Origin: Phallusia mammillata
Taxonomy: Eukaryota
Direction: 5' to 3'
Assembly (NCBI GenBank): GCA_965637545.1
Contig: OZ281499.1
Span: forward strand, 15,252,001 to 15,316,000
Length of the DNA stretch: 64,000 nt
Of the stretch, positions 4,211 through 48,784 are shown in pieces. A program made the position numbers and the translations under genes. Each line of letters begins with the position of its first letter. Position 1 is the stretch's first letter. The notes under the pieces are model-generated. The model worked only from the letters and a program-made list of their open reading frames with translations. It did not search any database and was not told the DNA's origin.

Positions 4211-4956
4211 CTATTGTTTGCACTCGGTTTCATGACAACCGCATTCGACGACGAAATCGTATTCGAAGTTATAGGCTAGTCCGTCAGTGCAGGATAGCTC
4301 AACGGTCTCGGGACGAGTGTGAATGGGGTGGCAGCAACGACACGATAAGTCGAAGTCACCGGTTTCACTACAAGATACACATAGTTAAACATGTGAGGCT
4401 CTTATCTACATATCCAACTTCACCATTGTTAAGCTTTAATCGTTTTTTAGCTTGCAAAGCTTTCCTCATAATTCACAACACTTTCTGAGGATAATTCTTT
4501 TTTAAATTAGATAAATAGGGGAATCATAAATACACAAAAAACGTAAACTTTTTTCTGGTACACTACCAGGCTATGCAGCGGTCGAGGTACCACATTTTCG
4601 ATTTCGACATGTTAGAAAGTCATGACTAGTGATCTGATAGGCAAAATGTCTGTACATGTATATTTAAGCAGTGTCGAAATGCTTTTAAGCAGATGTGAAG
4701 TTTTTACATAATTACTAAGATAATAAAATAAAACGACAATTTTTTGCAAGGTGAAAACTTACACATTGTAAGCAGACGTTGTCTTGCAAGATCCCACGCA
4801 TGTCGGGACGTTGACCTTGTCACTTGAAGTGCACGTGATATCAGGCCGTGTTGGTGGCGTTACTGTAATTATCTCATCGGTATCTTCGGGCGTGCACATC
4901 TTACAGGCTTGGCAGCACCCTTCGCTTGCAGTGGTGGGGAAGAGTTGACCACCAGC
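4211..4956 (-). CDS. C-terminal cystine knot (CTCK) exons
   Basis: Exons 4763-4956 and 4211-4367 give KMC...ITC...VNVPTCVGSCKT...SCRCCHP...VELSCTDG...YDFVVECGCHETECKQ*. The 11 Cys match VWF/mucin CK domains. Confidence 0.92.
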
Positions 4957-7900
4957 CTAACGAAATAATGTGTTAAGTGTTTGCATCACGCCTTTGACGA
5001 GTGTCGTGTCTAACAGATTTACCTTACTGCACTCTTCTGCGTCAACAGGTTCACACGTATATTTGTCGCTGGTCTTGATATATGGACAGTTAGACTCAAA
5101 CTGAAGACACTCCAGCACACTGCAATGATCATCATTTGACGACCATTTTGAGCCCACCTGTGCAAGTGTACATTAAATACGATTTAGAAATCAAGATTTT
5201 TTTTTCAGTTAGTATAGTCCAGGATAGAAAAAAAACTAATACGAAAATATGATTTCTTTATATATATGATTGTAACTTACATTTTGTTCAATAGGGAATA
5301 GATAAACATTACTTAAAAAACATACGCGAAACATACCGGATACGCGACTCCTTCCAATGCACAGCTATCGCATTTGCAGTAGTATTCGGGACAACACTGG
5401 TCCACCGTGTTGTTTCGAATCGCCTTGTAGCCCACTGGGCACGTAAAGTTGGAAGAGGGACATTCGTTGAAAAGAACGTTGACTGGTTTACACTTGCACT
5501 CGTACCTAAGCAAAAATTAAATCATCACAATACTGTTACAAACAAAATACATCATAAAACACATTATAATTATTTCATTAAAAGTCTATATCACCGCACA
5601 AATTCACTTACACCGGGCAACATCCATCATATGTTCCAGTATTTATAGCCTCCTCGTATTCTCCACAATTGCCTACAGTACAACACGATTTATCCTTGCA
5701 AACCACCTTCGATTCCGGGCAACAATTTTGGTTTGGGTTTTCATCATTTGTCTTTGGTACAATCGTCTCGCAGAGTTGGAGATCATTTGGATCGGGTTCT
5801 TGATAGTCGCGGCAGTCTTTGCAAACGCAACTGTAACTTGGGCAGCACGGATGATCAGATTTTGACTCCACTTTTTCCTTTCCATACTCACAAACCGTCT
5901 GCGCACCTTCACACCTGTAGAACTGAGATTCGTTGCAAACTATTTCAACCAACGGGCAGCATGCTTGGTTCGGGTTCTCTTCGAGAGTTAGGCTTCGCTT
6001 AACCTCGTACCATTCTGGGTCTCGAACATCCTCCGGTTTAACGTAGTCCGGTCCACAGTCTTCGCAGCCACACTCATAGGTAGGACAACAAACAGATGAA
6101 TGGTACGTCGGAGTGGCCTCATAATAGGTGTTACATTCTTGTGGTTCTGGGCAGGTTACAGCCCGTTGCTGGAAATCGTGTGAACAGGCGCCACTGATTA
6201 TCTTTTTAACGCACACCAGCACAGTACATGGATTTTCGGTCGTCACAATTGCTCCCAAAGGATAACTCTCGCTTTCGTGTTCACAGTTTGGTGGAATAAG
6301 AGTGACTACGAAGCACAAATCGGCTCCTCGTTGGTTGCTGCAGCGATATTGCACACATGGGTCTTCGGGATCTGTCCAAGTATCGTCTAAATTGTAAGTG
6401 TCTTCCCCATGGCGACAAACGTTACAAACACACCTTTCACGTCTGCAGCAGTTTAGTTCGTGCGCACATCCGTAATCGCCATCCACGTAATCGTCATCGA
6501 TTACCTTCTTGTAACCTTCATCACAATTAACGACAGGACACGCGCTCGACTTGCACTCAATCGTGTGAGTGGAGCAACAGTCTTCATAAACAGTGTAGAC
6601 CTGTTGCAGTGTGCAAACCGTGGGCGTTGGGTTGTAGGGACAAGACACTCTCGAACAGGTGTAACTTTCGCACGTAGGTACACAATCTCCCTTTCCTGAA
6701 TGGAAACCAGTGGAGGTTGCTTCATAGCAAGTGTCACACGTTGGTTTGGGAGGGCATAAGGTCGGATCGTTAACGCATTTTGAATCTTTAACACAACCAC
6801 AGGCGTCTCGTTCTGTGACTTCAGGTCGGCAACCAGGCTTCGACGCACATTCTTCTACGTCGGGATTAACCACACATTCAAGCGCTTCGGGACATCTGCA
6901 GTAGTTGGTCGGACACACGGTTCCCCTTTTAAATACTTCCTCCGGAGGTTCACAAGTCAGAGTGGCGTTTGCGTCAGGTGGGCAAACACATTCGTAAGTA
7001 TTGCAGCAAGCGCCGGTCTGGCCCGATATCTGGTGTTCTTGTGGAGGTTCGCACACAGGTTTAGCTGGGCAAAGGTCTGTATCGCATACACAGGAATACG
7101 ATGGACAACAGCCAACATCAAATGTTTTTCTTTGTCTTTTGTATTCGACTAGACATGTTTTGTTGTATGGTGAACACGTTTCACTTGACTCCACATCCTC
7201 TTTGCATACGCGCTCATATTCTGGACAACATTCATGACTATCTTCCTTGCGAACTACCTCCTCACCGGTTTGAAGAAGTGCTGCCACTTGATCATATGTT
7301 TCATAACTGGATCCACAACAGCTTGTATCGTTTGCACAGACTAAATAGGACGCAGGACAGCATTCCTGAATCGGGTTTTCCTCTACAGTTTTGTTTATTC
7401 GGATGTAACATTGATGGTCCGATGGTGGATTAAACAGCTTGGTGTTGCACTCGGGTTTACACACACAAATATATGACGGGCAGCATTCCGTTTTGTCATT
7501 GGTTCGAAGGCGTTCTTTGCCAATCGGACACGAGGTATTCCATTCGGGACAGGCCTGCGACAAGACCTCAGGACCAGCACAGTCGTATTTTGAACGCGGA
7601 CAACACACCTGATTAGGGTTTTCGTCCAAAGTTTGATTAACAACTACCTGGTATTCCGTCTCATTGCCTCCAGGTAAGGTAGAATAGTCGGTATCACATG
7701 GTTTGCACAGACAAGTGATTTTAGGGCAACAAACGCCAGGTAGATGTTCCACTTGTTTAGTTTGGAAAACATTGCAGTGCGCCGTTGGCGGACAAACTTC
7801 GATATCATCTACGAATGACGTTTCGCAGTGAGGTGAAATTCGACAAACCAAAGATTTACAAGGATCATTGGGCACTGGTAGTTTCGCTCCAATGCCAACA

Positions 7901-10900
7901 ATAACTTCAGTTCCGTTTTCTGAGGTATGTGTGCAATATGGATCACGTTCCGAAATTGAGTGACATTCGCCGTCCCAATCTCCCGTACACATTAGGACGT
8001 TGCAAGAGCCGGTAGCTATCCACTGTTCACCTACTTTGTAAGGAGTTTCTTTGTAGAAACAAACGTCGCAGACACACTTTTCTTTTGGGCAACAATCGAG
8101 GCCGGGCGCACAGGTAAGATCATTACTCCAGAATTCATCAGTAAGTTCTGCATGATAACCTTCTTTGCATTTCTCTCGCGGACATTTAGTTGAGTGGCAA
8201 ATGATTTCGGTCACTGGGCAGCATGGGTCAGAATTGTTTGCTGAAATAGTGTTAAATATGCAAATCGGAGGCAACTTCTGTTTTGGTGGGCATGAATTGC
8301 GTTTGCACTTGTATAAATTGCACGTAGAATTACAATCTCCAACAACAAGCTTGGTTGCAACAACCACAGCAGAGTAACAGTCAGGACAGTTTGGCGGATC
8401 GTCGCATGGTGCTGGATCACCAACACATGTCGAGTTAATTGCACATCCACATTCATCTCTGGCGTCCACAACCGCACGACAACCAGGTTTGTCGGTACAA
8501 TCAATTGTGGCTTCCTTCGGGCAATCATCCGGACATCTGCATTGTTTCTGCGGACATTCTGTTTCAGTGTAGGCTTCAACTTTTGGAGCGGTGCATACAA
8601 GATCTTCAGTGGGATCAGGTGGACAAATGCATGTGTATGTTGTGCAACACTCTCCATCACCCCGTGAACTACTAAGGACCTTATTTCCAGTGCAAACTGG
8701 CGAAGCATCACAAAGATCCAAGTCACAAATGCACGAGTAAGATGGGCAACATCCGTTGTCTTCACTATCACGACTAGATTTGTATCCTGTTTCACAGACT
8801 GGATAAGTTGAAGTGCACTTGGGATCGGTTGCCCCATTTGGATCGCAAATCTTTTCGTATTCTTGACAGCATTCTGTAGCTGGACTCTTAGGAATAACAA
8901 TCTCGGCTGTTTCCAATTGACTTTCTAATTCTTCCTTTGTCACATAATCGTCACCGCATTCTGGACACACACATTTATATGAGGGGCAGCAAATGAAATC
9001 CAAATCATCTTCGGGCCCGGGAGAAGACTGAACAACTTTGGGAGACGGACAAGCTTCTTTAACTGCTGCATACTGCGGGCAGCTGGCAGCCAGTTGCCCA
9101 GGTGGATAGCAAACACATCTACCTAAACAACCAGACGTGTCGTACTCAGGATCTGGTACCTGGCCTGGTAATGTACAAGTTCCATCAGGAGAGGGTTTTA
9201 CTTGTGGTAAATCGTATTCATCTGGATATTGGTTTGGATCACACACACAAGATTGAAGTGGACAACATTCATTATCTTCGTTTTCTGACTCCGATAACTT
9301 TTTGTACTCTGGACAATAATCAATCTCTCCTTCACATATAACACCGACACAAGTGCAGTCGTATGATGAACAACATTTATCATTGTGCGAGCCAGATTCT
9401 GATGGCGGATGTGTTTGTAGTTTTTTGTACTCGCAATCAGGTACCGCAGCACAAGCCGCATAATTGCAAACACATGTATATTGAGGACAACATTCTGTTT
9501 CGTCATTAGTCCTCTGCCGAATGTAACCATACTCGCAAGTAAAGTCGGACCACTGATCACATTCTTCTTGTAGTTCAAGATTTGGTTTACAAACGCAACT
9601 TCCTATTGGACAACACAGATTTTCGTCTTCGGGTGCATACTCAGTGACAAATTTCTTGTATTTTTCGCAAGGCAGTGATGGGGAAATGTACTCTGGACAT
9701 GTCTTGGGGCGACATTGATAGACATTGCAATCTGCATCACATTCATAAGTTCCGGGAATAGATTTGGTTGTCGATAATTCGTGACAGTCACCACATATAG
9801 TAGGATCTGGACAAAGTTGTGGATCGGGAACACATTCCGATGACTCGACGCAACCACAGTCAGCAGCAGATGCGTAGTTTAATTTTACTTTACATCCAGG
9901 ACTATGTGTGCAGTTGGCATCAACATGTGGACAATCACAAACACATGTAGGTTTAGGACATTCTCCTTCGGTGTATATAATTACTTCGTATTTCCCTTCA
10001 CATATAGGCTTATCATATTTTGGACAAACGCACTTGACTTCAGGGCAGCAGTAACCAGGTTGATCGACATATTGTGCACTCTTTTGACCTTCGCATACCT
10101 TAGTTGGACACGTGTTTTGCTGATAGTAGGCCTGATAAGTTTCACAGTTGGTGTTGGTAGCTGCGTTGTACTCTGCACAGACGTAAACACCACAACCATC
10201 CTCAGATGGAACTGTTGTTCCTGGTTTGATCGGTTTGCTGTTGACCGGATTGCGACAGAGAGGGCAGCACACTAAGTAAAATACATATCTGTCATTGCAA
10301 AATCAGTACAACTATGACACTTGTAAGCTTATTATTTACCGCATTCATCAGTGTAGGTCTGACACCCACATTCATCAACTCCATCCTCCACTGGTGCGTA
10401 ATTATTGCCTTCCTCACAAACTGGTGGAGCTGGACAGTTGCAACCTGGAAATGGGATGAAATTGATTATAAAAGCTTGATTGTCATGTATTTCATAGTAA
10501 GCTGGTTGCTAACTTTCAGAAAAAGTAGAAACACTTTTGAATGTCGAAATCGACGAACTTCTTACAAATCATCAGAACAAAGAAAGTTTATGGCGCTTTT
10601 AAGGATGTTTGTAATGTGTAACAATATGTATGTAAATAACAATACGTAAAGGTAAATTTTAAACTTTTGTTATGTTTTAAACAACCAGTGCTTACATTCC
10701 TCTTTGATGCATTCTTTATTTTCATCACTGCGATACACGTAACCGTCTGGACAAGTACACGCCGAGACCGGTACATTGGTGCAGATAGTTGGGTCCTGCA
10801 AAAATGTTAATTTAGACATTTTATACTTTTAGTCATGAGGATTTTTCTCACCTGTGTTGTGAGATTAAAACAACTTTTACTTGCGGTGCAAGAGTCAATG

Positions 10901-13900
10901 CACTCACGGTAGACTTCAATTCCGGTGCAACTTACGTTACCTGCGGACAAATAATTAACATATATGCATTTTTGCAAAGGTATATCAGTAAATTGTAATC
11001 ATAAGTACCTTCGTCGCAGTCCAAGGCCTTTTGGTAATTGCCACAACTGCCTTTGTTTCTACATTGGGTGACATGTTGCTGAATGAAACGCGATGTGCAA
11101 ACGTTACATTGCGCTTCGACAGCTGATGCAGTCTCATTGTCAAAAAAGCACTGCTCCTGACTACACAGTTCACGCAGTTCCGTTAGGTTAGCCCCTTGGT
11201 GACAGTCGTCTGAAAACAAATTTTCTAATAAAAAGAAGCCAAGGATTTTTAATTAAGGCACATAAACAAACAGGTTACCGAAAACGGGGTCGTTCAAAGC
11301 ATCACATGGGTCGCTGTATCCGAAGTACGAGCAATTTCGACAAACAATGCACGGACTGACTGTTTGACATCTTTCCTCGTCACAAGTGTTGCCATATCCA
11401 CACGGAGGAAGACAAGTTGAATCTTGTTGGTAATCAGTGACGACAACAGGGTCAAACGTCGGACATTCGTATTCAGGTCCATCCCCACAATTACCTGAAA
11501 ATTTTCGAAGTAACATTGCAAGCCATCTACATTATAGGCTTCAAGCACAAAAGAAAGGGTGGAATGAAAAAAAATAATCTTACCGCACAATCCCATTGTT
11601 CCGGTGCTTCGCGCAGATAAGAACAGGTCAATGACGCCCACAGCATTGACATTTCGTCCGATGTCAGGATTTCGATAGTAAATTACAGTACTTTCCTCCT
11701 TGAGCCACAATACGACGTAAACAACATATTTAATAGAGCCACGGTTTACTGTGCCTCGGTATATGTGGACGCCGTAGTTGTGATATTCCTTGACTTCGTT
11801 TCCATTCAACAAAACCTGCACACCGTACACACAATTTAAGTAATGTATATTAAACCGCTTTAATCATCCAAATAACCTACTTTTCCTGTTGTTGGAAATA
11901 GTTCGAAGCGATTTTTCTTGTAACGAATAGTCAGCTTTTTGTAGCACAGTTGGTTAGATGTGTATGTTCCACTTGGTAAAAGTTGTGCGCAATGAGCTTG
12001 CTCCACCAACACCTCGAATCGATCACTTTCAATATCCTTTATACAGAAATCTTAGATAATGTCCTATTGTAGAAATAAGTAGAAACTACCAACCCTTGTT
12101 AAAAGATACGTGCAATTGCCAACTAGGTTAAATTGCTGTCGACAGCGATATCTCCAGGAATTTGATGTTCCGAGGTCTCGGCATTTGCCTATCAGAGCAT
12201 GTGACAAGTAACAATTTAAAGTTGCCTTATGGAGTAGTTCAGTTACTTACAGATGCATTTATATTCGTCACAGCAACTTGTGTTTGAAGCAAAAACCTTT
12301 TCTTGGTCGTAGCTGCAAGTTACATTTGCGCATGTCTTGTCAACTGGAAGGGATAAAAATTGGTGACGCCATTTAAACAACTAGGGAAATCAGAAAATAA
12401 AGCTTAAACCTCACCGCATTGGTATACGGGGCCACAGCAAGGATCATCACGCACGAGTTCTTTCTCTTGACATTCTCCGCATGTAACTTCATCTTCGCAT
12501 TCGAATTTTTCTTCCCTCTCTTTTTCCGGACACTTGTTCGCTTCTCGTTGGACGATTTTGATTTTGTAGCACTCGGGATTCTCAGGATCATCATACTCGT
12601 AACCGACCTACGTTGTAAAAAATGAACTGGTTGAACAAATAAACTAAACGACCGAACAACAACAAAGTTAAAATAGAAATAGGAAACGTTTTGCTTGTCA
12701 CAAACGCTTTAGTCGAGATAATGTGTAAGATTTATTTTACAACAAGACCAACCGATTGTAGACTTCCGTTGATGTCCGCATATTTGCATTCTGTTCACAA
12801 AACAAAATATTTCATTAGTTCAAAGTATGACCGTATCATAAATGTTTGCAGAATTACGTTTAATACAAAGCTATGTGTTTGTTAGTATTGTTACATTACT
12901 CGTCCACTTACCACAGTAATAATATTTGCAGCATTTATCGTCTATGGTAGTGTTCTCTATTTTCACATATTGACGATTGGGACATTCGGTCCCATCTGGA
13001 CAACTTGTATCGCCATCGTAGGATGTTTCGAACACATTAGTTGACGTGTTTTGCAGGCAAGAATAGTACGAACAATCATCTTCCCATTTCTCATCCGGCT
13101 AAAAAAATTAAATTACCTAGTGCATATAACAAGATTCAGTGGTTCTGAAAATAAATGACCATACCTCATAATATTTCCCTTTGTACATGCAACGTACGCT
13201 TTCTGTAATGACAAAAAGTGTAATGGTTATCAAAATTAACATCAACAACTTGAAAGGGGTTTGCATCCCACCAAAAATCATTTGAAATAACACTCATCAA
13301 ATACAAACAAGAAATGTGCTACTTACTACACTCAGTCTCATTGCAACATTGATTTACACCGTCAGCTACACTGACAATCGTCAACTCCTCTGTAGAATCG
13401 CACTTGTTTTGTTCGCATTTGGAATAGTCACACACTGAAAAAATAATCGTTTTTGTGTTTTAAAAACAAAATGCCAATGGTAGCACAACAAAAAATTAAC
13501 TAAGTAAAACATACCACAGTCATAGGCAGGACAACATCCGTATGATCCATCAGCCAAGCCCAAATATTGTCGTTTTTGATCACTCCGACAAGTGAAATCA
13601 AACCATTGGTCACATACTTCCTCTAGACCCGCACTTTGTTTACACTCGCAACCATATCTGTCACAACATTTGCCGGTGTCTTCGTTCGAGTAATGCTGAG
13701 TCTGTTGTTGATATTTCGAACAGGATGGAGCATCGTAGACAGGACACGGGTCTTTTTGACATTGGTACTTGGGACAGGTTGAGTTGCAATCGCCAACGAC
13801 TATCACAGTGTCGACTTGGATGGATGAATAACAAGTCGGGCAATTAGGTGGATCATCGCAAGGTGCTGGATCTCCAACACATGTCGAGTTAATTGCACAT

Positions 13901-40900: not shown

Positions 40901-43900
40901 AGTGATAACTTAATAAAACGAAATAGCATTGCTGTGCAAAACAGCTGATTTCTAATCACCGAAACGACGTGTCGTGAAACGTCTGTCCGATGTCAAGCTG
41001 AACCCTCCTGCTATCGTAAACCAATGAGTTACTCTCTTGGGACTTCTGCCTACAGTGTCTTTCTTGACCAAACGAGCGTTAGACACATTTACGTTTCGGG
41101 GGCCTGTGGGTGAACCGCTGGGTCAATCGGGGTAAAACTTCTGGAGGATCAAGTTCAGATTAATATCTAACATGTGTCCAAATTTAAATAAATTAGAAGC
41201 ACTCTTTCTTTACCAAACGAGCGTTACAAACCAGCGTTAAAATATTACGTTTCGGGGACCTGTGGGTGAACCGCTGGGTAATTTGGGGTCAAACTTCTGG
41301 TGGACCAAGTTTGGATAAATATCTAACATATGTCCAAATTTCAATAAATTTGAAGCACGCTTTCTTCACTAAACGAGCGTTACAAACCAGCGTTAAAAAT
41401 TTTACGTTTCGGGGGCCTGTGGGTGAACCGCTGGGTAATTTGGGGTCAAACTTCAGGTGGACCAAGTTTGGATTAATATCTAACATATGTCCAAATTTCA
41501 ATAAATTTAAAGCACTCTTTCTTGACCAAACCAGCGTTACAAACCAGCGTTAGACAGAAAAAAGAAAAAAAAAAAAAAAAAATACGGACAAAAACAATAT
41601 GTGTCCCCTTCAGGGAAGGGGACCCATAATTACTTTGCACAAAGTATATAAAAAGTACAACAAAATAAATCGTTAATACCTTTATCGCTATTTATTTGGC
41701 ACGGATGAACCGGTTTGTTAGGAATATCATCACAATCATCATCCAATTTCCATGAATTGCCAAATGATGTTGGTGTACTTTCTAGAATGTTTTGTGACGA
41801 CAGAAAGTCATCAGCTGAGTTGCCGTTGTAATCCCCGGCAAGACCACACAGCTTGCCTGCAAAACGACGACCGGAACATGAAAACTTCACCACTCGTTAG
41901 TTTTTAACAAATCAGGCATAAGGTATTTGAAATGCAATAGCTAAGGGACTAAAACAGGTCAAAAGTTTTTCTTGATAATGATGAACACATCGCCGCATTG
42001 ATATTATGGCATGTGTTTGAACCTTTTACCCGACTTAGGGGTATAGCGCGGTAATTGATAGGGCTATAAAACTGATGCCACCGACAGTCACTGTATCTAC
42101 CAAGTGTAAAATTTTAACTTCAATTTAACATACAATTCATTATTTTGCTGTATTATGTTTAATTTCTGTATATTGCCTCAGTAACAAAAACTAACCAATG
42201 ATCAGCAACTATTCTACTACTGTCTAAATATCGTGGCAATGTACAGCAAACAGATCGTTATAATAAATATGCAGAATGTTATAACATACTACGTAAAATA
42301 TCAATAGCATAAATATCTAAAAACATGAATCGCGTTACAATACAGATTTTGTTCAGTTTTTAATATTTAAACAAGCAAGTTCCACTGAACTTTGAACATA
42401 AAAAAGGTATTGTCACTGCATAGGCGTTCATTAATCTCTGACCTCTGTACTTCTGTGGCACTGTAACGAAGAGAGTGTCGTGTCCATTCCAAAGTACACA
42501 AATACCAGTTTGTCTGTGGGACACGCGGATATAAAGAGACGACTCACGATAAATGTTCACGTCACCTGAAAAAAAAACACATATTAAAAACGATAACGTT
42601 AGAGAATCGTTATCTCGACTAGGGAACTTTGCATATCGACGCTGTAGCTTTTTAATACTGTGTAATCTAAAATAGAATCTCCAGCTCTTTGCTTGGTGGA
42701 TGAACCTATAATGAACCTTGTGCTTATTGATAACGTTTATGAAAACCATTGCGTCATTCACCCTTAAGAATTTATAATTTGCATATTTTGCACCACCAAA
42801 TAGAATCTATTTAAATAAGATACCGATGATGCTGTAAATGTGAAAAGTATACATCTCAATTTTATAAGGGTGAATGACTTAATGTTTTTCATAAAGTGTA
42901 GCTTTTTAGTTAGTCAAACAACACAAAAACGATCTTTTATATTTCTTATTTTTTTGTATTTTACTAATCAAGATACGTAAAAAATCTCATTCACCTGATG
43001 ATATTCACTATCACAAAAATATGCATTTAAAAATATGTATAACAAAAAACAAACAAAAATACTTTGAAACAGAAACAGGTGCTTACCAGATTGGTAGGGA
43101 AGTTGTACCTCGTAGTTGTTGATGCTTACTACGTGAAATTCGGTCAAAGAGATTTTCTACACAAAACAAAAGCCTTCTTTTAGCTTAATTTGTGTTTTTG
43201 CATGATAAACAATTGCCTAAAACTGAAAGCAAATATGCACAATAGCAGCAGTGAACGCCAATGGCTCATTTAACCGGTACTACGCTTCGTAAAATTTGAA
43301 CATTCGTGGGAAGCCCAAAAACTGTCGTTATATTTTTTTTGAAAATGACACATAAAAAAGGTAGAGAAAAAGACAAAAAGGTAGAAGAAAAAAGGCAGCA
43401 AATACCTGGCTTTTGCCGAATATGATTAGTTCGATAGTAAATGTCTTAATACAGCTTGTCCCACGATCGGCTCCACAATCAGTACTTTCCAAGTACATGG
43501 TAAAGGATTGGTCAGCGCAGTCTTTGGCAAAAACATACTGACAGCGGCCAACAAATGTAAAGAACTTGTCATCAAAGGTTTTGAAATGGTCGAACCCGAA
43601 AATGTGGGCTGTACCAGGACACATTGACGACTCACATCTCCATTGTCCAGCATCGCAGGTACTGTAGAATAAAATTTATCGTTTTATCACAATTTAATAA
43701 AAAATAAAAATTGCAATTTTTCATCCAGTGTTCGCTTTCGAGTAATGGTTTTGGTGCTTGTAGCCATTTACCCTTGGTCTACAATAACTGATAAGCTATA
43801 TCGAATTGTAGTAATTGGCATGACACTTTGTAGTAAATTTGGCAGCTTTTTACACGTTCACGTATCATTTAAGCTACTATAATTTTACTTAGTCACAAAT

Positions 43901-46900
43901 AGGCCAAAACATGAAATGTTTTAAAATCCAATATCAACCCCCCGCTTAGCTGTTTCGTACCTCTGGGTAAGAAACCCTTTTATGGAGTTTTCACTATGTT
44001 TTAAAAACTCCGAATGTTAAGGTTGTGCAACAACTTGAGCGCTAAATAAGTGTTATAAATGCCAAAGTTGGGGTTGCACAATCAGATCAGACAAAAAGTT
44101 TGTAAGCATAAAATCAGTACAAAACGCTTTACTTAAATAATTTCAAAACGTACCAGTTGTTGCAGTTAAAGGTGCTAGTTCTTTCTCCAGGTCTGTATTC
44201 TATTCCTTTGTGGATGCACGGACAGTTGGCGAGAACAGTGCAATCACCAGCATGTTCGTATCGTCCTGTAATGTACGTTAATGTTACATAGTTTGCAAAA
44301 GAGCACATTTGCATTCATTATTTACAAAACACAAACCGTATGGACACTGGCATCTGTCGAAGCAAAGTTGATTTGGCAGGAGATGTGGAACAATGCAAGT
44401 CTGGGGCGATTCCTTTCCACATTCGATCCATTCCTGATTTGCTGGACATCCTCTCACTGGACACAATAAAAAATGAACCATAACGCAATGTATCAAACCT
44501 TTTGCACATTACAAAACACTTACAGCATTGGTTTGTGGTTCTCCACTCAGGGGGTTCTGCACCGAATAACGCACAACTTCTGGAGTAAACAGTGACACTT
44601 TCACATTGGCAGTCGGCTCGAATCTTGTAATTGCATCTGCACAACTCCGTCTTACACAAATCATAATAGATGCTCGGATCGAGAACCTCGTGGCAAGAGG
44701 GAAATGATTCCCAGAGTATGTTACAAATATCACTTACTCCCTGTCAATGTTTAACACAATGTAATGCTTCAAATCTGCTGTAATTCAATTTAAGGTAGCA
44801 ACCGGACCACACACATAAATCGGTTACAACAATTTTAAGTTCAAATTTCATTCTGAATTTAAACATGGTAGTCATGCTCACCTGTTCTGCTTTGCATGTG
44901 GTGAAATTCTCTGTTACTGTTTTTATATCGTGACAAACCTCATTCACTTCTCGTTCAACCCATGTTTTGGCAACAATGTGTCCATTTATATCTCCAGTGA
45001 CAGGCACCCCTTTCAATTTACAATTCAGTTACAAATTACGGCAAAAAATAGTTAACAGTTCAATTAGTTATTAGGATTAATCTGCTCACATGAATCAGTT
45101 TTTCGTGCAACTCTAAAATCAGTCAAAAAGCAAAAATTATTTAGTAAAAATTCTAACCTTGTTTAGTTACAAGGTCATCGGTCTTGATTCCATTAAAGTT
45201 CCCACAAAGACCAGCAGTTTTGTTGTTATATCTTCCACTGTCAAGGATAACATGCACAGAACTTGTGTCCCGGTCAAACTTAACCTGCATCTCACCCAGT
45301 GATAGGATAATAAACGGCTGTGGGCGACTGATGAGCACTCCATAGCCATCAAAAGGTAATGAAATACTGAGGAATAGAAAAAACATATACCTTGGTCTAC
45401 AGTTTTACAAAAAGTCACTTACAACTTTATTACAACAGTTTGTCAGATTTTCCAAATGTAGTTGTATTAGTGTCAAAACAATAAACACTTAAAACTAGAC
45501 CAAACACTCACAAACTTATTGAAACTAAATCATAAAACTAAAACCAAGTCTTACAATTTTTCATTAAGAGTGACTTCCTGTTTAGTAATGGCAACCTTAA
45601 TGTTGGAAGCAGCAATCAAAACAGTAACCTGTGTGATGCATTTCAAATCATAAACATATTTTCCGTCTTCAACACAAGCAGGATTTTTTCGAACCAAGAC
45701 CTAAACATATAATTAATACATTTATTTCGTAATCTGTTAAAAAATGTGAAACAATGAAATCTAAAAACTTTTTACAGCAAGACAGAACAGGGTTCGGTGC
45801 ACCAAAGCATTATTAAGAAAAAGGTTCTTTTCTGCAAAAAAAGGCCTAAAGAAATGAAAAGTTCTGTTCTGCAAAAAATGTTTTTGCTATTTGACTATGC
45901 ATAGCTCTGTGGTAAAACAATATTTGCTAAAATTACAAGTGTAGAAGGGCCACAAAATAATTACAAGCAGTCAGTAAACCTTAAAATCTGGAGTGCCAAC
46001 AGAAGAGACCAATTCATATTGACAAACACCAGGAAAGTCATATAAAAAACCATCAAATGTTAACACATTTCCAGCTCCAAACACAGTGCATATTCCACCA
46101 CTGATGTCACTTGAAAGGTCTACAGTGGTTCCTGGGGGTTTGCTGTATGCACCTGGGAAACACAGAAGATAATACATTTCCAATATTACCCAAATCTACT
46201 TTTTACAATCATAACCAACCACATAACAATTATAAAACACAAATAAGAGTCAATAAAAGTACAAGGTTAACACAAAGAACCAAATCCACTGAAGTAAATC
46301 AGCACACAATCCAAGTTTAGGAAATTGAAAAATTAAGTATTTTAGAGAAACACACATGTAAAAAAATTATTTCAAGACAATAAATTGTGCATAATGTCCC
46401 ATGAGTTTGGTTTGCCTATGTAGTTTGTGTTACACTGGTTGCAGTACTCAAGGCACCTTAAAAAATTAACAAAAAAATTTCCACCTGCTAAAACTATTTA
46501 AGTGCAAAAATCTATCACGAGAACGAAACAAAAAGTTAAGCCAATCATTGTCTTACTGTAAAGGCAGCGGTGTCCGTAGTAACCTTCCCTGCATTGGCAT
46601 GTATTGGGCCCGATGCATGTTCCCCCATTTAGGCACGGTTGATCACATTGATCTGGAAATTCACAAATATTTTGGAGTATGTTTTGCGTTTTTTAATACT
46701 GTCATATTTGTGCTGATAAATCATGTTTGTTTGAGACATTATTGTAAGTTTGGACAAGAAATTAACAACATGATGTAGGAAAATATAGAAATACTTCTTG
46801 TTCTTTTAGAATGTGGTGCCCCCGAAGAGTCCCGATTTACCAACAAAAATAGTACACCAACTGTTGTCAAAATTAAACCAACTGTTGTCAAAATTTCGTA

Positions 46901-48784
46901 ATGTATTTAGTATTTTAATTCAGGACAATGCAAATTACCAAACAAGCATCGGATGATCGGATAACAAACGGATTTCTGTCACAACAAATGCCGAAAGTAG
47001 ACATCGAAAAAAATGCCGAAAATCCCCAAGGGAAACCCCCTCAATAAATTTGTTTTGCCAATTTGAAATAATTGTTCATGGGCACAAAAAAAGTTATTTT
47101 GTTACGTTTTAAGTTGTATACGATGGTTCACAAAATTTATAGTGACATGCAACATGACGTTGACATATACAAAAAGTTAGAAAATGATTATTTTACCTAT
47201 TTCATCCAAGTATTCACATCCAGGCACTTCCAATGCGCGAATACACTGTTCGGTTTTGTGGTCATACGCTGTTTTATGGGCGCATTTTGTCTCGTAGGGT
47301 TGGCCATTAATGCAGATATTGAAATAAACGCAGTTATAGACTTCTTGAAAAGTAAAAAATTGTTTCACTGTTCCTTTGTCGTCCCTGCAGATATCGTCCG
47401 TGCCTGCAAAAATATAACAGGTAAAGCAGTGTCAAAAATTTTGCCAGTTAAAGTAACCGTGCTTAACGTTTTAGTGTCAAAACTTGTCACAAACTTATCG
47501 GTCAGAAACAAAGACAAATTGGTTTTCTCAACGAATATTTTCTGAATTGTTGGCGTTGCCTGCAGTGATGTCGAAATGATATGACCAAACATAGCAAACA
47601 TTAGATTTTCATGAATTGGCGGCAGGTCGGTGCCGAAATTGTGTTTGTTTCCTGAGAAAATTTGTGTTGTCGCAAACGTGACAGATCTATATGGTGCTTG
47701 GATGCAAGTTCAGAAAAAACACTTAATCGTTCACCTTTGGTATTAAAGATATATATATTTCGCTACTACAGCATCGTCAGTATCTTATTCAAATAGAACC
47801 AATAGGTGTTTTTTCGGAACTTACATCCATTGCTATAAGGTTCATTATTCTTCATCCACCAAGCAACGGCCTGGGTGATTTCAGCTTTAAGTTTCAATTA
47901 CGAGTATATGGTGCTTGATTTGAAATTACCCAAACGCGACAAATGTCAAAATTACTTACGATCATCCAAATGGTTGACAGTTTCTAAATCCCCATTGTCC
48001 ACTTGTCGTTTGACTGCAAAACAAATGTTACAAATAAAACACATGTAACAATTGAACGAAAATTGGTGCCGAAAAATGAAATAAAAATATTCGCGGTGTG
48101 GACACTCGGTGCTGTGGTCAAAAAACTCACCTATCGAGGAAACATGGATCTTAGTTTCCTCATTCCTGCAAAACAAATCCCATCATGTTATTATCGGAAT
48201 ATCTACTTACACCATAACTCATGTCAGCCGCACATTTAGATAGGTGCGCAAAAGCACAAACACCTATTTGAAACGGTATATATCCAACCATACTGACGGT
48301 TAGGGCTATTAGGGTTGGGCTAAAATATTATCATTAAAAAATCCAATAGAACTGACATTAAAAATTAACAAGGTTCCAGTTCGTTATAATTTTTAAAAAC
48401 TTCCTAACCCTGCCCCATTTTAGCTGCTAAATTAATTCAGGTTTTTGCTTCCGCTATCGAGATTTAATTAAATGTGTGTCAGCCGTGAGTTATGAAAAAC
48501 TTACCATTCAAGTTTGTTTGTTGATTCCAACGCTTTTACATACAGAACTAAAAAAGACAAACGTTTTAATATTGCCTAGGTAGCTATAGTTGTATCATTA
48601 TCATTTTGTTCTTAAACTTCGTTTTAAATTCTCAGCTATTAAATAAGGAATTTATCGCAATGTACATGGAAGTAATAAAACACAGGATCAGAAAGAATTT
48701 ACTATACACCCATATTGTTAAAGTTAGAGACTTACGTAATAGGTTAACCACCAACAATTTCCAGAACAACATCCTGTCAATCAT
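4211..48784 (-). CDS. Giant secreted gel-forming mucin / von Willebrand factor-like protein (SP-CBM14-EGF-D1-D2-D'D3-short Thr patch-3x[D4-like + Cys-rich stalk]-CTCK); multi-exon
   Basis: Phase-consistent GT-AG exons were traced by eye. 5' end: 48736-48784 (ATG; MIDRMLFWKLLVVNLL), 48505-48547 (LLYVKA-LES, signal peptide), 48131-48165, 47960-48013, 47825-47884, 47197-47403, 46557-46652, 45980-46152, 45555-45700, 45158-45366, 44882-45009, 44524-44740. 3' end: 5612-10271, 5337-5505, 5023-5157, 4763-4956, 4211-4367 (TAG at 4211-4213). Recognisable vWD (TFDG/TFDD/TFDH, GLCGNF), C8, TIL and cystine-knot motifs occur in mucin/VWF order. Not every internal exon edge was verified. Confidence 0.92.
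5612..13434 (-). repeat. Intragenic module III (giant exon 5612-10271)
   Basis: Exons 12094-12188 (95 bp), 11584-11815 (232 bp), 11279-11494 (216 bp). The 4660-bp exon carries 28 CC doublets, mostly in CCPxYxCxC-type units. This module lacks the VKPPC and GSLSY/GTISY exons seen in modules I and II. Confidence 0.9.
13515..20424 (-). repeat. Intragenic module II (giant exon 13515-15725)
   Basis: Exons 18017-18111 (95 bp), 17297-17528 (232 bp), 16665-16880 (216 bp). The giant exon is 2211 bp and homologous to 20532-22754. Confidence 0.9.
23114..23365. mobile_element. Non-autonomous hAT MITE (252 bp)
   Basis: TIR CAGTGATTTTCAACC / GGTTGAAAAACACTG. Perfect 8-bp TSD GTCTACGC. Subterminal tgttccg motifs. 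Confidence 0.92.
25694..26108. repeat. Long inverted repeat (158-bp arms, 99-bp spacer) made of tRNA-derived SINE-like sequence
   Basis: Arms 25694-25851 and 25951-26108 are reverse complements except for one mismatch (25812/25990). The 18-bp direct repeat TGATTAATATGAAAGCAG occurs at 25596-25613 and 26104-26121. Confidence 0.92.
25939..26012 (+). ncRNA. tRNA-like Pol III unit (non-canonical; SINE head or pseudo-tRNA)
   Basis: Cloverleaf with acceptor GCCTGTG/CGCAGGC, D stem GCTC/GAGC, anticodon-like stem GAGTC/GACTC with loop CCGGAAA, and T arm GTGGG-TTCGAAT-CCCAC, followed by T5 at 26016-26020. It lacks U33 and has an extra nt after the D stem, so it is unlikely to be a translating tRNA. 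Confidence 0.6.
30104..30331. mobile_element. Older hAT MITE (228 bp)
   Basis: Imperfect TIR CAGTGGTCAGCAA / TTGCCGACCACGG. TSD GTTTAATG / GATTAATG (7/8 match). Subterminal ggtccgc repeats. Confidence 0.8.
33200..33688 (-). CDS. Two exons encoding a very short Thr-rich (PTS-like) segment
   Basis: Exons 33579-33688 and 33200-33276 give CGPCPTTTTTVTTTTATTIYTTVTTPTSTTTVTTPKPCPKAC. Confidence 0.85.
34075..38040 (-). CDS. D'D3 assembly exons (TIL'-E'-vWD-C8-TIL)
   Basis: CPPGQVYHNC...ECAKTC; GWCSVTGESHYKTFDHKWFDFAGDCEYVL; KVCGLCGNFDG; C8 [40 protein letters not shown] (34608-34764); TIL CEWRYDVCGTSCPDTC...CLEGCHPKCP (34075-34240). These closely match the VWF/mucin D3 pattern. Confidence 0.92.
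38060..43661 (-). CDS. D2 assembly exons (vWD-C8-TIL-E)
   Basis: CPGTAHIFGFDHFKTFDDKFFTFVGRCQYVFAKDC; KLCGLAGDYNGNSADDF (exon 41680-41856); C8 exon 39382-39603 (FEFCAC...CMCGALAVYAQKC...VDWRSPDFC); TIL CTGGQIYKPCGSGCGKTC. Confidence 0.9.
39966..40681. mobile_element. Non-autonomous hAT (Ac-type) element (716 bp)
   Basis: 20-bp TIR TAGGGCAAATATTTTTTGAC / GTCAAAAAATAATTGCCCTA (19/20 match). Perfect 8-bp TSD GTGATTAG (39958-39965, 40682-40689). Dense GTCAAAA arrays at both subtermini. Confidence 0.9.
41057..41630 (+). mobile_element. Tandem array of 3+ units of 156-157 bp, then A-rich tract and terminal hairpin (HINE/pearl-like non-autonomous element; 5' end uncertain, possibly about 40730)
   Basis: Anchor acgtttcggg recurs at 41091, 41247 and 41404. 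It is followed by acagaaaaaag-A-run-tacggacaaaaacaatatgt and a 9-bp stem GTCCCCTTC-agg-GAAGGGGAC (41603-41623). The family assignment is inferred from architecture. Confidence 0.7.
44154..46152 (-). CDS. D1 assembly exons (vWD-C8-TIL-E)
   Basis: GICTVFGAGNVLTFDGFLYDFPGVCQYEL; KTAGLCGNFNGIKTDDL; C8 CHEVLDPSIYYDLCKTELC...CQCESVTVYSRSC...EWRTTNQC; TIL CPANQEWIECG; CPCIHKGIEYRPGE. Confidence 0.9.
46557..46652 (-). CDS. Exon encoding an EGF-like domain
   Basis: [28 protein letters not shown] has canonical EGF Cys spacing. 96-bp phase 1-1 exon. Confidence 0.9.
47197..47403 (-). CDS. Exon encoding a CBM14 / peritrophin-A (ChtBD2) chitin-binding domain
   Basis: Translates TDDICRDDKGTVKQFFTFQEVYNCVYFNICINGQPYETKCAHKTAYDHKTEQCIRALEVPGCEYLDEI. 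Six Cys are spaced x18-x5-x9-x12-x8 with aromatics (YF, YD) at typical CBM14 positions. Phase 1-1 exon. Confidence 0.88.

What the first reader, a model, noticed from the sequence alone, without database searches (positions are those of the whole stretch)
4211..48784. A ~7,000-aa chitin-capped, PTS-poor, disulfide-built mucin/VWF-like polymer subunit
Seen: one continuous spliced ORF with mucin/VWF termini (D1-D2-D'D3 ... CK). The centre is not O-glycosylated PTS but thousands of residues of CCPxYxCxC-type Cys-rich units with many NxS/T sites, plus three D4-like assemblies. Known: gel-forming mucins and VWF have one D4 and a short C-domain stalk. Inference: this is a filament or net-forming protein (pharyngeal feeding net, gut chitin membrane, tunic or clotting scaffold) whose mesh spacing is set by a hyper-extended stalk rather than by a glycan brush. 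The length is a rough hand sum.
Basis: partly seen in the sequence, partly recalled or inferred. Interest (0 to 1): 0.82.

Follow-up and report, generated by a model that had tools for sequence, protein, structure and literature searches.

The report
Giant cysteine-built sea-squirt mucin/VWF relative
This is one very large sea-squirt gene for a secreted protein with the polymer-forming ends of mucins and von Willebrand factor and a chitin-binding cap, but its long middle is built of thousands of residues of disulfide-locked mini-domains instead of a sugar-coated mucin region, a layout not yet described.

Summary
On the minus strand, from about 48.8 kb to 4.2 kb, lies one multi-exon gene of about 6,500-6,900 residues (my partial models give 6,260-6,518). 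Its order is CBM14, EGF, three canonical VWD-C8-TIL assemblies, a PTS stretch of about 32 residues, small Cys-rich exons, three tandem modules, then VWC-like exons and a cystine knot. Each module is a divergent VWD-C8-TIL assembly followed by a giant exon of 740-1,552 residues.

Spliced contigs prove that giant exon 1 is joined onward into module 2. My gene finder recovered all six observed junctions without being given them. D3 keeps both cysteines that VWF uses for intermolecular bonds.

The giant exons match no Pfam family and no solved-structure sequence. Only 12 relatives turned up among 1.84 billion representative proteins, and the named ones are all ascidian fragments. Clavelina shows the same collinear layout, split by annotation.

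The closest described protein is Ciona Ci-GFM1 (2,880 aa, CBD, tiny PTS, one D4). I call this a new variant of a known kind. Polymer formation and chitin binding are inferred, not shown, and tissue and function remain open.

Earlier notes of this scan report other giant VWF/mucin variants on other DNA of this genome.

The parts
48736..48784 (-). Candidate first exon: ATG at 48784, MIDRMLFWKLLVVNLL, GTAAGT donor. A possible signal peptide. The 5' end is not settled.
   Evidence: Sequence read directly. Its phase fits the acceptor at 47403. No RNA support was obtained.
47197..47403 (-). Chitin-binding peritrophin-A domain (CBM14) with six Cys.
   Evidence: Pfam PF01607, E 1.1e-6, 29.1 bits, above the cut-off of 22.1.
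46557..46652 (-). EGF-like domain.
   Evidence: Pfam EGF (23.2 bits) and EGF_2 (23.1 bits), E about 1e-4, both above their cut-offs.
44154..46152 (-). D1 assembly: VWD1 (46152..45156), C8-1 (44740-44524), TIL1 (44456-44337), E-like exon (44265-44154).
   Evidence: Pfam VWD start E 9e-7 and end E 4e-10; C8 E 1e-13; TIL E 4e-4, 20.9 bits, below the cut-off of 24.5.
38299..43661 (-). D2 assembly: VWD2 (43661..41680), C8-2 (39603-39382), TIL2 (38853-38707), E2 (38389-38299).
   Evidence: Pfam VWD E 5e-11 and 2e-5, C8 E 5e-20, TIL E 9e-11.
33579..38087 (-). D'D3: TIL' and E' (38087-37400), VWD3 (37307..35619), C8-3 (to 34608), TIL3 (34240-34075). Keeps the cysteines equivalent to VWF C1099 and C1142.
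   Evidence: Pfam VWD, C8 and TIL. C8-3 exon against VWF residues 1076-1126, E 8e-21. TIL3 exon against MUC2, MUC5B and VWF D3, E 4e-7.
33200..33688 (-). The only PTS-like stretch, about 32 Thr-rich residues over two exons. It joins the end of D3 to a VWC-like start.
   Evidence: Gene models, sequence, composition scan.
29977..32930 (-). Seven small Cys-rich exons (CC..C.C units) between the PTS stretch and module 1.
   Evidence: Gene models. Homologous to the N-terminus of Clavelina P0003.
20532..29700 (-). Module 1: small Cys-rich exons; divergent VWD (27372..26264); C8-like (25314-24387); TIL-like (23952-23471); giant exon 22754-20532 (740 aa).
   Evidence: RNA junctions 23739|23861 and 20532|20424.
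13515..20424 (-). Module 2: same order of parts; giant exon 15725-13515 (736 aa).
   Evidence: RNA junctions 20424|20532, 20222|20384, 19798|20033, 19048|19152 and 18766|19011..
5612..13434 (-). Module 3: same order of parts, without the two small exons that open modules 1 and 2; giant exon 10271-5612 (1,552 aa, two super-units).
5023..5505 (-). C-terminal VWC-like exons.
   Evidence: Homology to the C-termini of P0001 and P0003. In P0003 this part hits the VWF C4 domain at E 0.035.
4211..4956 (-). C-terminal cystine-knot (CTCK) domain and stop codon (4211-4213).
   Evidence: phmmer against PDB: Norrin and VWF CTCK at E 1e-4. Pfam DAN and Cys_knot, sub-threshold.

Best explanation
One gene on the minus strand encodes a secreted protein of about 6.5-6.9 thousand residues. 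It belongs to the VWF / gel-forming-mucin superfamily.

Likely mechanism, by homology:
- The C-terminal cystine knot joins two chains tail to tail.
- The D3 assembly, which keeps both intermolecular cysteines of VWF, joins dimers head to head into disulfide-linked polymers.
- The N-terminal CBM14 domain ties the polymer ends to chitin.

The middle is not a glycan brush. It is a protein spacer of about 5,000 residues made of small disulfide-locked modules. Some are VWC-like. Many are short six-Cys CC(P)xxxCxC units. Three divergent VWD-C8-TIL assemblies interrupt the array. This spacer arose by tandem triplication of a module.

The most likely setting is a chitin-containing extracellular sheet or mucus such as the ascidian gut envelope membrane, by analogy with Ci-GFM1.

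Shown: domains, conserved cysteines, splicing across one module boundary, restriction of the centre to ascidians.
Inferred: a single transcript over the whole length, polymerisation, chitin binding, tissue.
For: - Domains: Pfam CBM14, EGF and three sets of VWD/C8/TIL; CTCK.
- D3 cysteines: the C8-3 exon aligns to VWF 1076-1126 at E 8e-21 and has Cys where the C1099A chain 7kwo_V has Ala. The TIL3 'CEWRY' Cys falls on VWF residue 1142.
- Splicing: contigs carry GT..AG junctions on the minus strand that join giant exon 1 to module 2.
- Gene model: an ab initio dynamic-programming model, not given these junctions, recovered all six. It runs as one open frame through 71-81 exons.
- No separate start: the exons after D3 have no Met followed by a signal peptide.
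- Domains span exon boundaries. The PTS exon ends in the start of a VWC-like domain that the next exon continues.
- Clavelina: VWD-C8-TIL gene models lie directly upstream of the homologue P0003 on the same strand, about 560 nt away. P0003's annotated start Met is internal to an exon whose frame continues upstream.
- Internal assemblies: a profile of them hits the MUC5AC D1 assembly at E 8e-5 and the TIL protein BSTI at E 0.018.
- Centre: conserved Cys pattern at 35-50% identity across three ascidian orders. AF2 pLDDT 82-86.
- Ci-GFM1 precedent: PMC6109156.
Against: - RNA evidence covers only 6 kb, and the runs are RNA only by inference from the spliced junctions.
- No annotated protein anywhere joins the D1-D3 part to the Cys-rich part. 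Public models in Clavelina, Styela and Phallusia are separate fragments.
- The 5' end and the signal peptide are not settled.
- Pfam does not recognise the internal VWDs or any VWC in the centre.
- The short units match no solved fold, so calling them a 'stalk' is by analogy.
- There is only one CBM14 domain.
- No expression site is known.
Confidence: 0.6

Rival explanations
1. Two or more genes. An N-terminal gene (CBM14-EGF-D1-D2-D'D3-PTS) would end near 33.5 kb. One or more separate kielin/chordin-like genes would encode the Cys-rich modules and the cystine knot.
For: Public annotations split the locus in this way in Clavelina: models of 564 aa, 797 aa and 3,613 aa. No database protein joins both parts. 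Reading through the donor at 33579 reaches a stop after about 10 codons, so a short isoform is conceivable.
Against: The exons downstream of 33.2 kb have no start codon with a signal peptide, yet they encode a disulfide-rich secreted protein. The Clavelina model's start Met lies inside an exon whose frame continues upstream. Phases fit throughout. The one module boundary that was tested is spliced through.
Confidence: 0.1
2. It is one gene, but it works elsewhere. It could be a fibre of the pharyngeal feeding mucus (endostyle product), a tunic component or a wound/clot scaffold, with CBM14 binding another glycan or serving no chitin role.
For: Ascidians carry many multi-VWD proteins of unknown role (PMC4948705). 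The make-up of the filter is unresolved (bioRxiv 10.1101/2025.01.21.634085). The runs that hold the transcript are of unknown tissue.
Against: CBM14 is a chitin-binding module, and the one characterised ascidian relative that carries it, Ci-GFM1, is enriched in the gut chitin membrane compared with pharyngeal mucus cords. The filter proteomics found no mucus-specific peptides, though it used databases that lack this gene.
Confidence: 0.25
3. The Cys-rich arrays act as BMP or growth-factor binders, like chordin, kielin/chordin-like protein or NELL, rather than as a structural spacer.
For: NCBI names the Styela homologue 'kielin/chordin-like'. The best Foldseek hits of the 400-residue model are NEL/NELL2 and VWC domains.
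Against: There is no Pfam VWC hit. The matches are weak (Z below 5). The protein has the full polymerisation set of VWF and mucins plus a chitin-binding cap, and its size is far beyond that of signalling modulators.
Confidence: 0.05

Closest known systems
Ci-GFM1, the gel-forming mucin of the Ciona gut chitin membrane (Nakashima et al. 2018, PMC6109156; LC072665)
   Same: Both are ascidian proteins. Both have one CBM14-type chitin-binding domain, D1-D2-D'D3, a PTS of only tens of residues after D3, an internal D assembly, VWC domains and a cystine knot. Both keep the intermolecular cysteines.
   Different: Ci-GFM1 has 2,880 aa, one D4, and FN2 domains. This gene has about 6.5-6.9 thousand residues, three internal divergent D assemblies and four super-units of about 740 residues without Pfam matches. 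No FN2 was seen in the exons scanned. No Ciona protein appeared among the 12 relatives of the super-unit.
Human von Willebrand factor
   Same: D1-D2-D'D3 at the N-terminus and VWC plus CTCK at the C-terminus. The C8-3 exon is about 60% identical to VWF 1076-1126. The cysteines equivalent to C1099 and C1142 are kept, and the CTCK domain matches.
   Different: No VWA domains and no furin site were seen between D2 and D'. There are three internal D assemblies instead of one D4. The Cys-rich spacer is about 5,000 residues instead of six C domains. A CBM14-EGF cap is present.
Vertebrate gel-forming mucins (MUC2, MUC5AC, MUC5B)
   Same: The N-terminal D assemblies and the TIL3 'CEW(H/R)Y' motif, the cystine knot, and no propeptide cleavage site.
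   Different: The PTS stretch is about 32 residues instead of thousands. No CysD domain and no GDPH motif were seen.
Kielin/chordin-like protein and NELL (VWC-repeat proteins)
   Same: Arrays of small Cys-rich beta-hairpin modules. The first unit of each giant exon is weakly VWC-like.
   Different: There is no Pfam VWC match. Most units are shorter six-Cys modules with CC-x4-C-x-C endings. The polymerising ends are absent from KCP and NELL.
Other giant VWF/mucin variants noted by this scan in the same genome (s1-388441, a 98-bead exon; s1-355925, twenty VWA domains)
   Same: The same theme: a VWF/mucin frame whose centre is something other than PTS.
   Different: They are different central modules on other DNA. 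I did not compare them at sequence level here, and the look-up by sequence was blank.

Membership tests
VWF / gel-forming mucin superfamily | Three N-terminal VWD-C8-TIL assemblies (D1, D2, D'D3) | tested here: met
   Pfam VWD, C8 and TIL hits on exons between 46.2 kb and 34.0 kb.
VWF / gel-forming mucin superfamily | D3 cysteines that make intermolecular disulfides (VWF C1099 and C1142) | tested here: met
   Alignments to VWF and MUC2 D3 chains. Cys is present at both positions. Bond formation itself cannot be tested here.
VWF / gel-forming mucin superfamily | C-terminal cystine-knot dimerisation domain | tested here: met
   The last exon hits Norrin and VWF CTCK at E 1e-4. The Clavelina orthologue hits VWF CTCK at E 1e-8.
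VWF / gel-forming mucin superfamily | A D4 assembly between the centre and the C domains | tested here: inconclusive
   Three internal VWD-C8-TIL-like assemblies exist. Their profile hits the MUC5AC D1 assembly at E 8e-5 and Pfam misses them. Nothing marks them as D4 in particular.
Gel-forming mucin (strict sense) | A long, densely O-glycosylated PTS domain | tested here: not met
   The only PTS-like stretch is about 32 residues. S+T+P is 21% overall.
von Willebrand factor (strict sense) | VWA domains between D3 and D4 | tested here: not met
   No VWA hit in any exon scanned, nor in the homologues. Not every small exon was scanned.
Ci-GFM1-type chitin-binding GFM | A CBM14 chitin-binding domain on a D1-D3...CK frame with a minute PTS | tested here: met
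   CBM14 at E 1.1e-6. PTS of about 32 residues. Compared with the description in PMC6109156.
Ci-GFM1-type chitin-binding GFM | Orthology to Ci-GFM1 (sequence, one D4, FN2 domains, about 2,900 aa) | not testable with these tools
   The LC072665 sequence could not be fetched and the supplementary alignment is not held as text. Size and the number of D assemblies differ.
Kielin/chordin-like VWC-repeat proteins | Repeated Pfam-recognisable VWC (chordin-type CR) domains | tested here: not met
   No Pfam family in the giant exons or in P0001, P0003 and P0005. The fold match of the first unit is only Z 4.9.
SCO-spondin | TSR and LDLa repeats between VWD and CTCK | tested here: not met
   No TSP_1 or LDLa hit in any scan.

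The most novel reading that the evidence does not exclude
The protein would be a rod-like, glycan-poor structural filament particular to ascidians. Tail-to-tail dimers of a disulfide-locked bead chain of about 5,000 residues would span a few tenths of a micrometre. That is a rough inference from the size of VWF C domains. If so, the gene would set the sub-micrometre spacing of a regular extracellular net: either the chitin-framed gut envelope membrane or the rectangular pharyngeal filter, whose reported pores are 0.2-0.5 by 0.5-2.2 um and whose protein make-up is unknown. Proteomics would have missed it because public databases hold only unnamed fragments of it.
Probability: 0.12. Interest if true: 0.8.

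Novelty: new variant of a known kind. Interest (0 to 1): 0.55.

Why it matters
Mucins and VWF are usually explained as one polymerising frame with an exchangeable centre: a glycan brush in mucins, A domains in VWF. This gene shows a third kind of centre in the sister group of vertebrates. It is a very long, conserved, disulfide-built protein spacer, punctuated by extra D assemblies and combined with a chitin-binding cap.

It extends the Ci-GFM1 story of a chitin-to-mucus transition in chordate guts. It also gives a concrete candidate for the unknown proteins of ascidian extracellular nets.

In practice, it shows that current ascidian annotations cut these genes into pieces named 'uncharacterized', 'kielin/chordin-like' or 'notch-like'. 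That would hide them from proteomics and from surveys of mucin evolution.

Tried and rejected
- Pfam on the three giant exons and on the homologues P0001, P0003 and P0005 found nothing.
- phmmer of a giant exon against PDB sequences found nothing.
- Pfam on single exons of the internal D assemblies found nothing. Only a profile built from several copies reached MUC5AC.
- Foldseek and the wide VIA search with the three-unit model (pLDDT 86) gave no credible match, best Z 2.9. The short units therefore stay unassigned. I do not claim a new fold.
- A word search with P0003 over its whole length, for models of 2,000-6,300 aa, found no full-length orthologue.
- One retraining of my gene finder used a wrong reading phase and gave nonsense. 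I discarded it and repeated it correctly.
- I scanned the frame 45170-45418 in the wrong frame. The right frame, 45156-45404, holds the end of VWD1.
- I tried to get the Ci-GFM1 sequence or alignment from the paper's supplements. Only legends and a proteome table are held.
- SCO-spondin, KCP/NELL, hemolectin-type and peritrophin readings were considered and set aside (see the membership table).
- The species was not established. Other agents' notes say Phallusia mammillata. If that is right, P0001 (49% identity) is a paralogue rather than the orthologue. I did not test this.
Full report
**What is there**

The window has no N runs. All long Cys-rich open frames between 4.2 kb and 48.9 kb lie on the minus strand. 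The gene therefore runs from about 48.8 kb (N-terminus) down to 4.2 kb (C-terminus). Upstream, at 53-62 kb on the same strand, is an unrelated gene with carnitine-acyltransferase-like frames. That gene bounds the locus.

**Ends of the protein**

Pfam was run on single exons by reference.
- CBM_14 at 47180-47431 (E 1.1e-6, above the curated cut-off). Its six Cys have peritrophin-A spacing; the consensus is from my own knowledge.
- EGF at 46501-46692.
- Three canonical D assemblies:
  - VWD1 start and end, C8-1, TIL1.
  - VWD2, C8-2, TIL2.
  - TIL'/E' and the start of VWD3, the end of VWD3 and C8-3, TIL3.
- The last exon (4214-4366) hits Norrin and the VWF cystine-knot domain at E 1e-4.
- The C-terminus of the Clavelina homologue hits VWF CTCK at E 1e-8 and the VWF C4 domain at E 0.035.

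None of the three N-terminal VWDs has a GDPH motif.

**Polymerisation residues**

The C8-3 exon (34608-34764) aligns to VWF residues 1076-1126 at E 8e-21. The chain of 7kwo_V, a C1099A construct, shows Ala where the other VWF chains and the window have Cys. The C1099 equivalent is therefore present.

The TIL3 exon aligns to the D3 assemblies of MUC2, MUC5B, MUC5AC and VWF (best E 4e-7). Its 'CEWRY' cysteine falls on VWF residue 1142 by index. That these two cysteines make the intermolecular bonds is established knowledge (VWF C1099/C1142; Ci-GFM1 discussion in PMC6109156). Bond formation in this protein is inferred.

**The centre**

After D3 comes a Thr-rich stretch of about 32 residues over two small exons (33688-33579 and 33276-33200). 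It is the only PTS-like segment. Overall S+T+P is 21% and Cys is 12.7%, about 820 cysteines. N-glycosylation sequons are enriched: 65 against 38 +/- 5 in residue shuffles.

Seven small Cys-rich exons follow. Then come three tandem modules. Each module has small Cys-rich exons, a divergent VWD-C8-TIL assembly and one giant exon:
- 22754-20532 (740 aa)
- 15725-13515 (736 aa)
- 10271-5612 (1,552 aa, holding two super-units)

The giant exons are 61% identical (1 against 2) and 84% identical (2 against the first 661 residues of 3). The modules are therefore tandem duplicates of different age.

**Internal D assemblies**

Pfam sees nothing in their exons or in the contiguous Clavelina protein. Even so, the pieces are conserved between the window's three copies, two Clavelina copies and Styela. 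A profile of them hits the MUC5AC D1 assembly over VWD-C8-TIL at E 8e-5 and the TIL protein BSTI at E 0.018.

They are real but very divergent D assemblies. Nothing shows that they are D4 in particular. The canonical GDPH..TFDG start is replaced here by '..YRCR..F.L.GNC'. Clavelina ('TFNCN') and Styela ('PFHCN') share an extra Cys at that place.

**Nature of the Cys-rich units**

The giant exons match no Pfam family and no PDB sequence.

An AlphaFold2 model of the first 400 residues, built from 16 aligned copies, has mean pLDDT 82 and pTM 0.33. That fits confident small modules on a flexible or extended chain. The model consists of a series of disulfide-rich beta-hairpins. The best Foldseek hits are NEL/NELL2, the MUC2 C-terminal domains, VWF C4, and the CCN3 and collagen IIA VWC domains. 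In the VIA re-alignment, residues 1-81 match VWC domains (CCN3 Z 4.9, rmsd 6.2 over 67 residues; collagen IIA Z 3.8; MUC2 Z 3.8; VWF C4 Z 3.1) and FnI modules (Z about 4). These matches are weak but consistent. The first unit is VWC-like.

A separate model of three short six-Cys units (C-x6-C-x14-CC-x4-C-x-C; pLDDT 86) found nothing credible. Foldseek E values were all above 0.8, and the wide VIA search gave a best Z of 2.9, to the MUC2 C-terminus. I leave these units unassigned. A weak search result does not prove a new fold.

**One gene or several**

Shown:
- Contigs of four runs of one study carry six junctions with CT..AC ends on the plus strand, that is GT..AG on the minus strand.
- One contig runs from giant exon 1 (20646-20532) through the 41-nt exon (20424-20384) into 20222-20108.
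- Others continue to 19798 and through 19152|19048 and 19011|18766.
- The gene is therefore spliced and transcribed, and module 1 is joined to module 2.

Inferred:
- My own dynamic-programming exon finder used codon log-odds plus generic splice matrices and was not given these junctions. It recovered all six and gives a single open frame of 53, 71-73 and 77-81 exons (5,286, 6,260-6,315 and 6,431-6,518 aa) as the coding model improved.
- Exons known from homology but still missed, such as the N-terminal VWD pieces of the modules and parts of VWD1, would bring the total to about 6.5-6.9 thousand residues.
- Downstream of D3 no exon offers a Met with a signal peptide.
- Domains span the exon junctions there.

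In Clavelina lepadiformis the same layout is collinear. Two VWD-C8-TIL models (564 aa and 797 aa) lie directly upstream of the 3,613-aa homologue, on the same strand, about 560 nt away. That homologue's annotated Met sits inside an exon whose frame continues upstream with the sequence homologous to the window's exon 32930-32735. The public split therefore looks like an annotation artefact.

The 5' end is not settled. ATG 48784 with a GTAAGT donor fits in phase and is hydrophobic, but it is unverified.

**Relatives**

- The word search found a Phallusia mammillata fragment (2,427 aa, 49% identity, named 'notch-like', ending in a cystine knot) and an unnamed protein of 2,146 aa.
- The exhaustive HMMER search of 1.84 billion representatives with a giant exon gave only 12 proteins at E <= 0.001.
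- The named ones are Clavelina ('uncharacterized') and Styela clava ('kielin/chordin-like').
- The centre is therefore, as far as can be seen, restricted to ascidians. It is present in all three ascidian orders. Its Cys pattern is conserved at 35-50% identity.
- Copy number varies. The Phallusia fragment has three super-units before the knot and the window has two.

**Comparison with what is known**

The closest described protein is Ci-GFM1 of Ciona, which was cloned by RT-PCR and RACE. It has 2,880 aa, one CBD, D1-D2-D'D3, a 50-residue PTS, one D4, two VWC domains and a cystine knot. It is the third most abundant protein of the chitin-framed gut envelope membrane and is enriched there over pharyngeal mucus cords (PMC6109156).

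The present gene shares the cap, the frame and the minute PTS. It is more than twice as long, has three internal D assemblies, and has four super-units that no Ciona protein matched. Whether it is an expanded orthologue or a paralogue of Ci-GFM1 could not be tested.

Tunicates are known to carry many multi-VWD proteins (17 in Ciona; PMC4948705). Earlier notes of this scan report other giant VWF/mucin variants elsewhere in this genome. I did not check those notes.

**Mechanism, with odds**

I commit to a secreted polymer, disulfide-linked through CK and D3, whose ends bind chitin and whose centre is a protein spacer rather than a glycan brush (0.6).
- Setting in a gut chitin membrane or its mucus: about 0.4 of the total.
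- Another extracellular net (pharyngeal filter, tunic, clot): about 0.25.
- Separate genes: about 0.1.
- A growth-factor-binding role: about 0.05.

The idea that rod length sets a mesh is attractive. The ascidian filter is described with pores of 0.2-0.5 by 0.5-2.2 um and has no known protein. A recent preprint even doubts the mesh and found no mucus-specific peptides, although it used databases that lack this gene. The idea remains speculation.

**Limits and rules kept**

I did not build, search or fold a joined full-length protein. All searches used single exons by reference or database proteins. The single reads call was kept to 6,000 letters.

Noticed in passing
window 25596-26121: Within the intron between the VWD and C8-like exons of module 1, both strands read through tRNA-like sequence (frames such as 'GGIRTHD...LPTEL'). 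It looks like an inverted pair of tRNA-derived SINE-like units.
   Followed up: no
window 53300-62700, minus strand: The upstream neighbour has frames typical of a carnitine/choline O-acyltransferase, including transmembrane-looking N-terminal frames near 60.9-61.3 kb. It bounds the mucin-like gene.
   Followed up: partly
L001 9900-10100 (Clavelina lepadiformis OX392445.1): The RefSeq model XP_076818448.1 starts at a Met that is internal to an exon. The frame continues upstream ('PGEIWFDEACQGLECTFFGEECLT-M...') and matches the window's exon 32930-32735. The Clavelina locus seems to be cut into three gene models.
   Followed up: partly
window 27283-27372, 17984-18199, 12094-12183; P0003 about 240-270; P0005 about 38-65: All internal VWDs carry an extra Cys where canonical VWDs have 'TFDG'. 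The window has 'YRCR', Clavelina 'TFNCN' and Styela 'PFHCN'. The feature is conserved across ascidian orders, so it is a family trait, perhaps an extra disulfide.
   Followed up: partly
window 13434-13327 compared with 20424-20033 and 30017-29511: Module 3 lacks the two small exons (41 nt and 190 nt, together 77 codons) that open modules 1 and 2. The frame is kept.
   Followed up: no
P0001 (Phallusia mammillata) compared with window 10271-5612: The number of super-units before the cystine knot differs: three in the Phallusia fragment and two here. Identity is only 49%. If other agents are right that this genome is P. mammillata, P0001 would be a second, paralogous gene.
   Followed up: no
window 23113-23273: A 1,214-nt contig of run X1 matches two short intronic pieces with 455 other letters between them and loose ends on both sides. 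It is probably a dispersed repeat, not part of the transcript.
   Followed up: no
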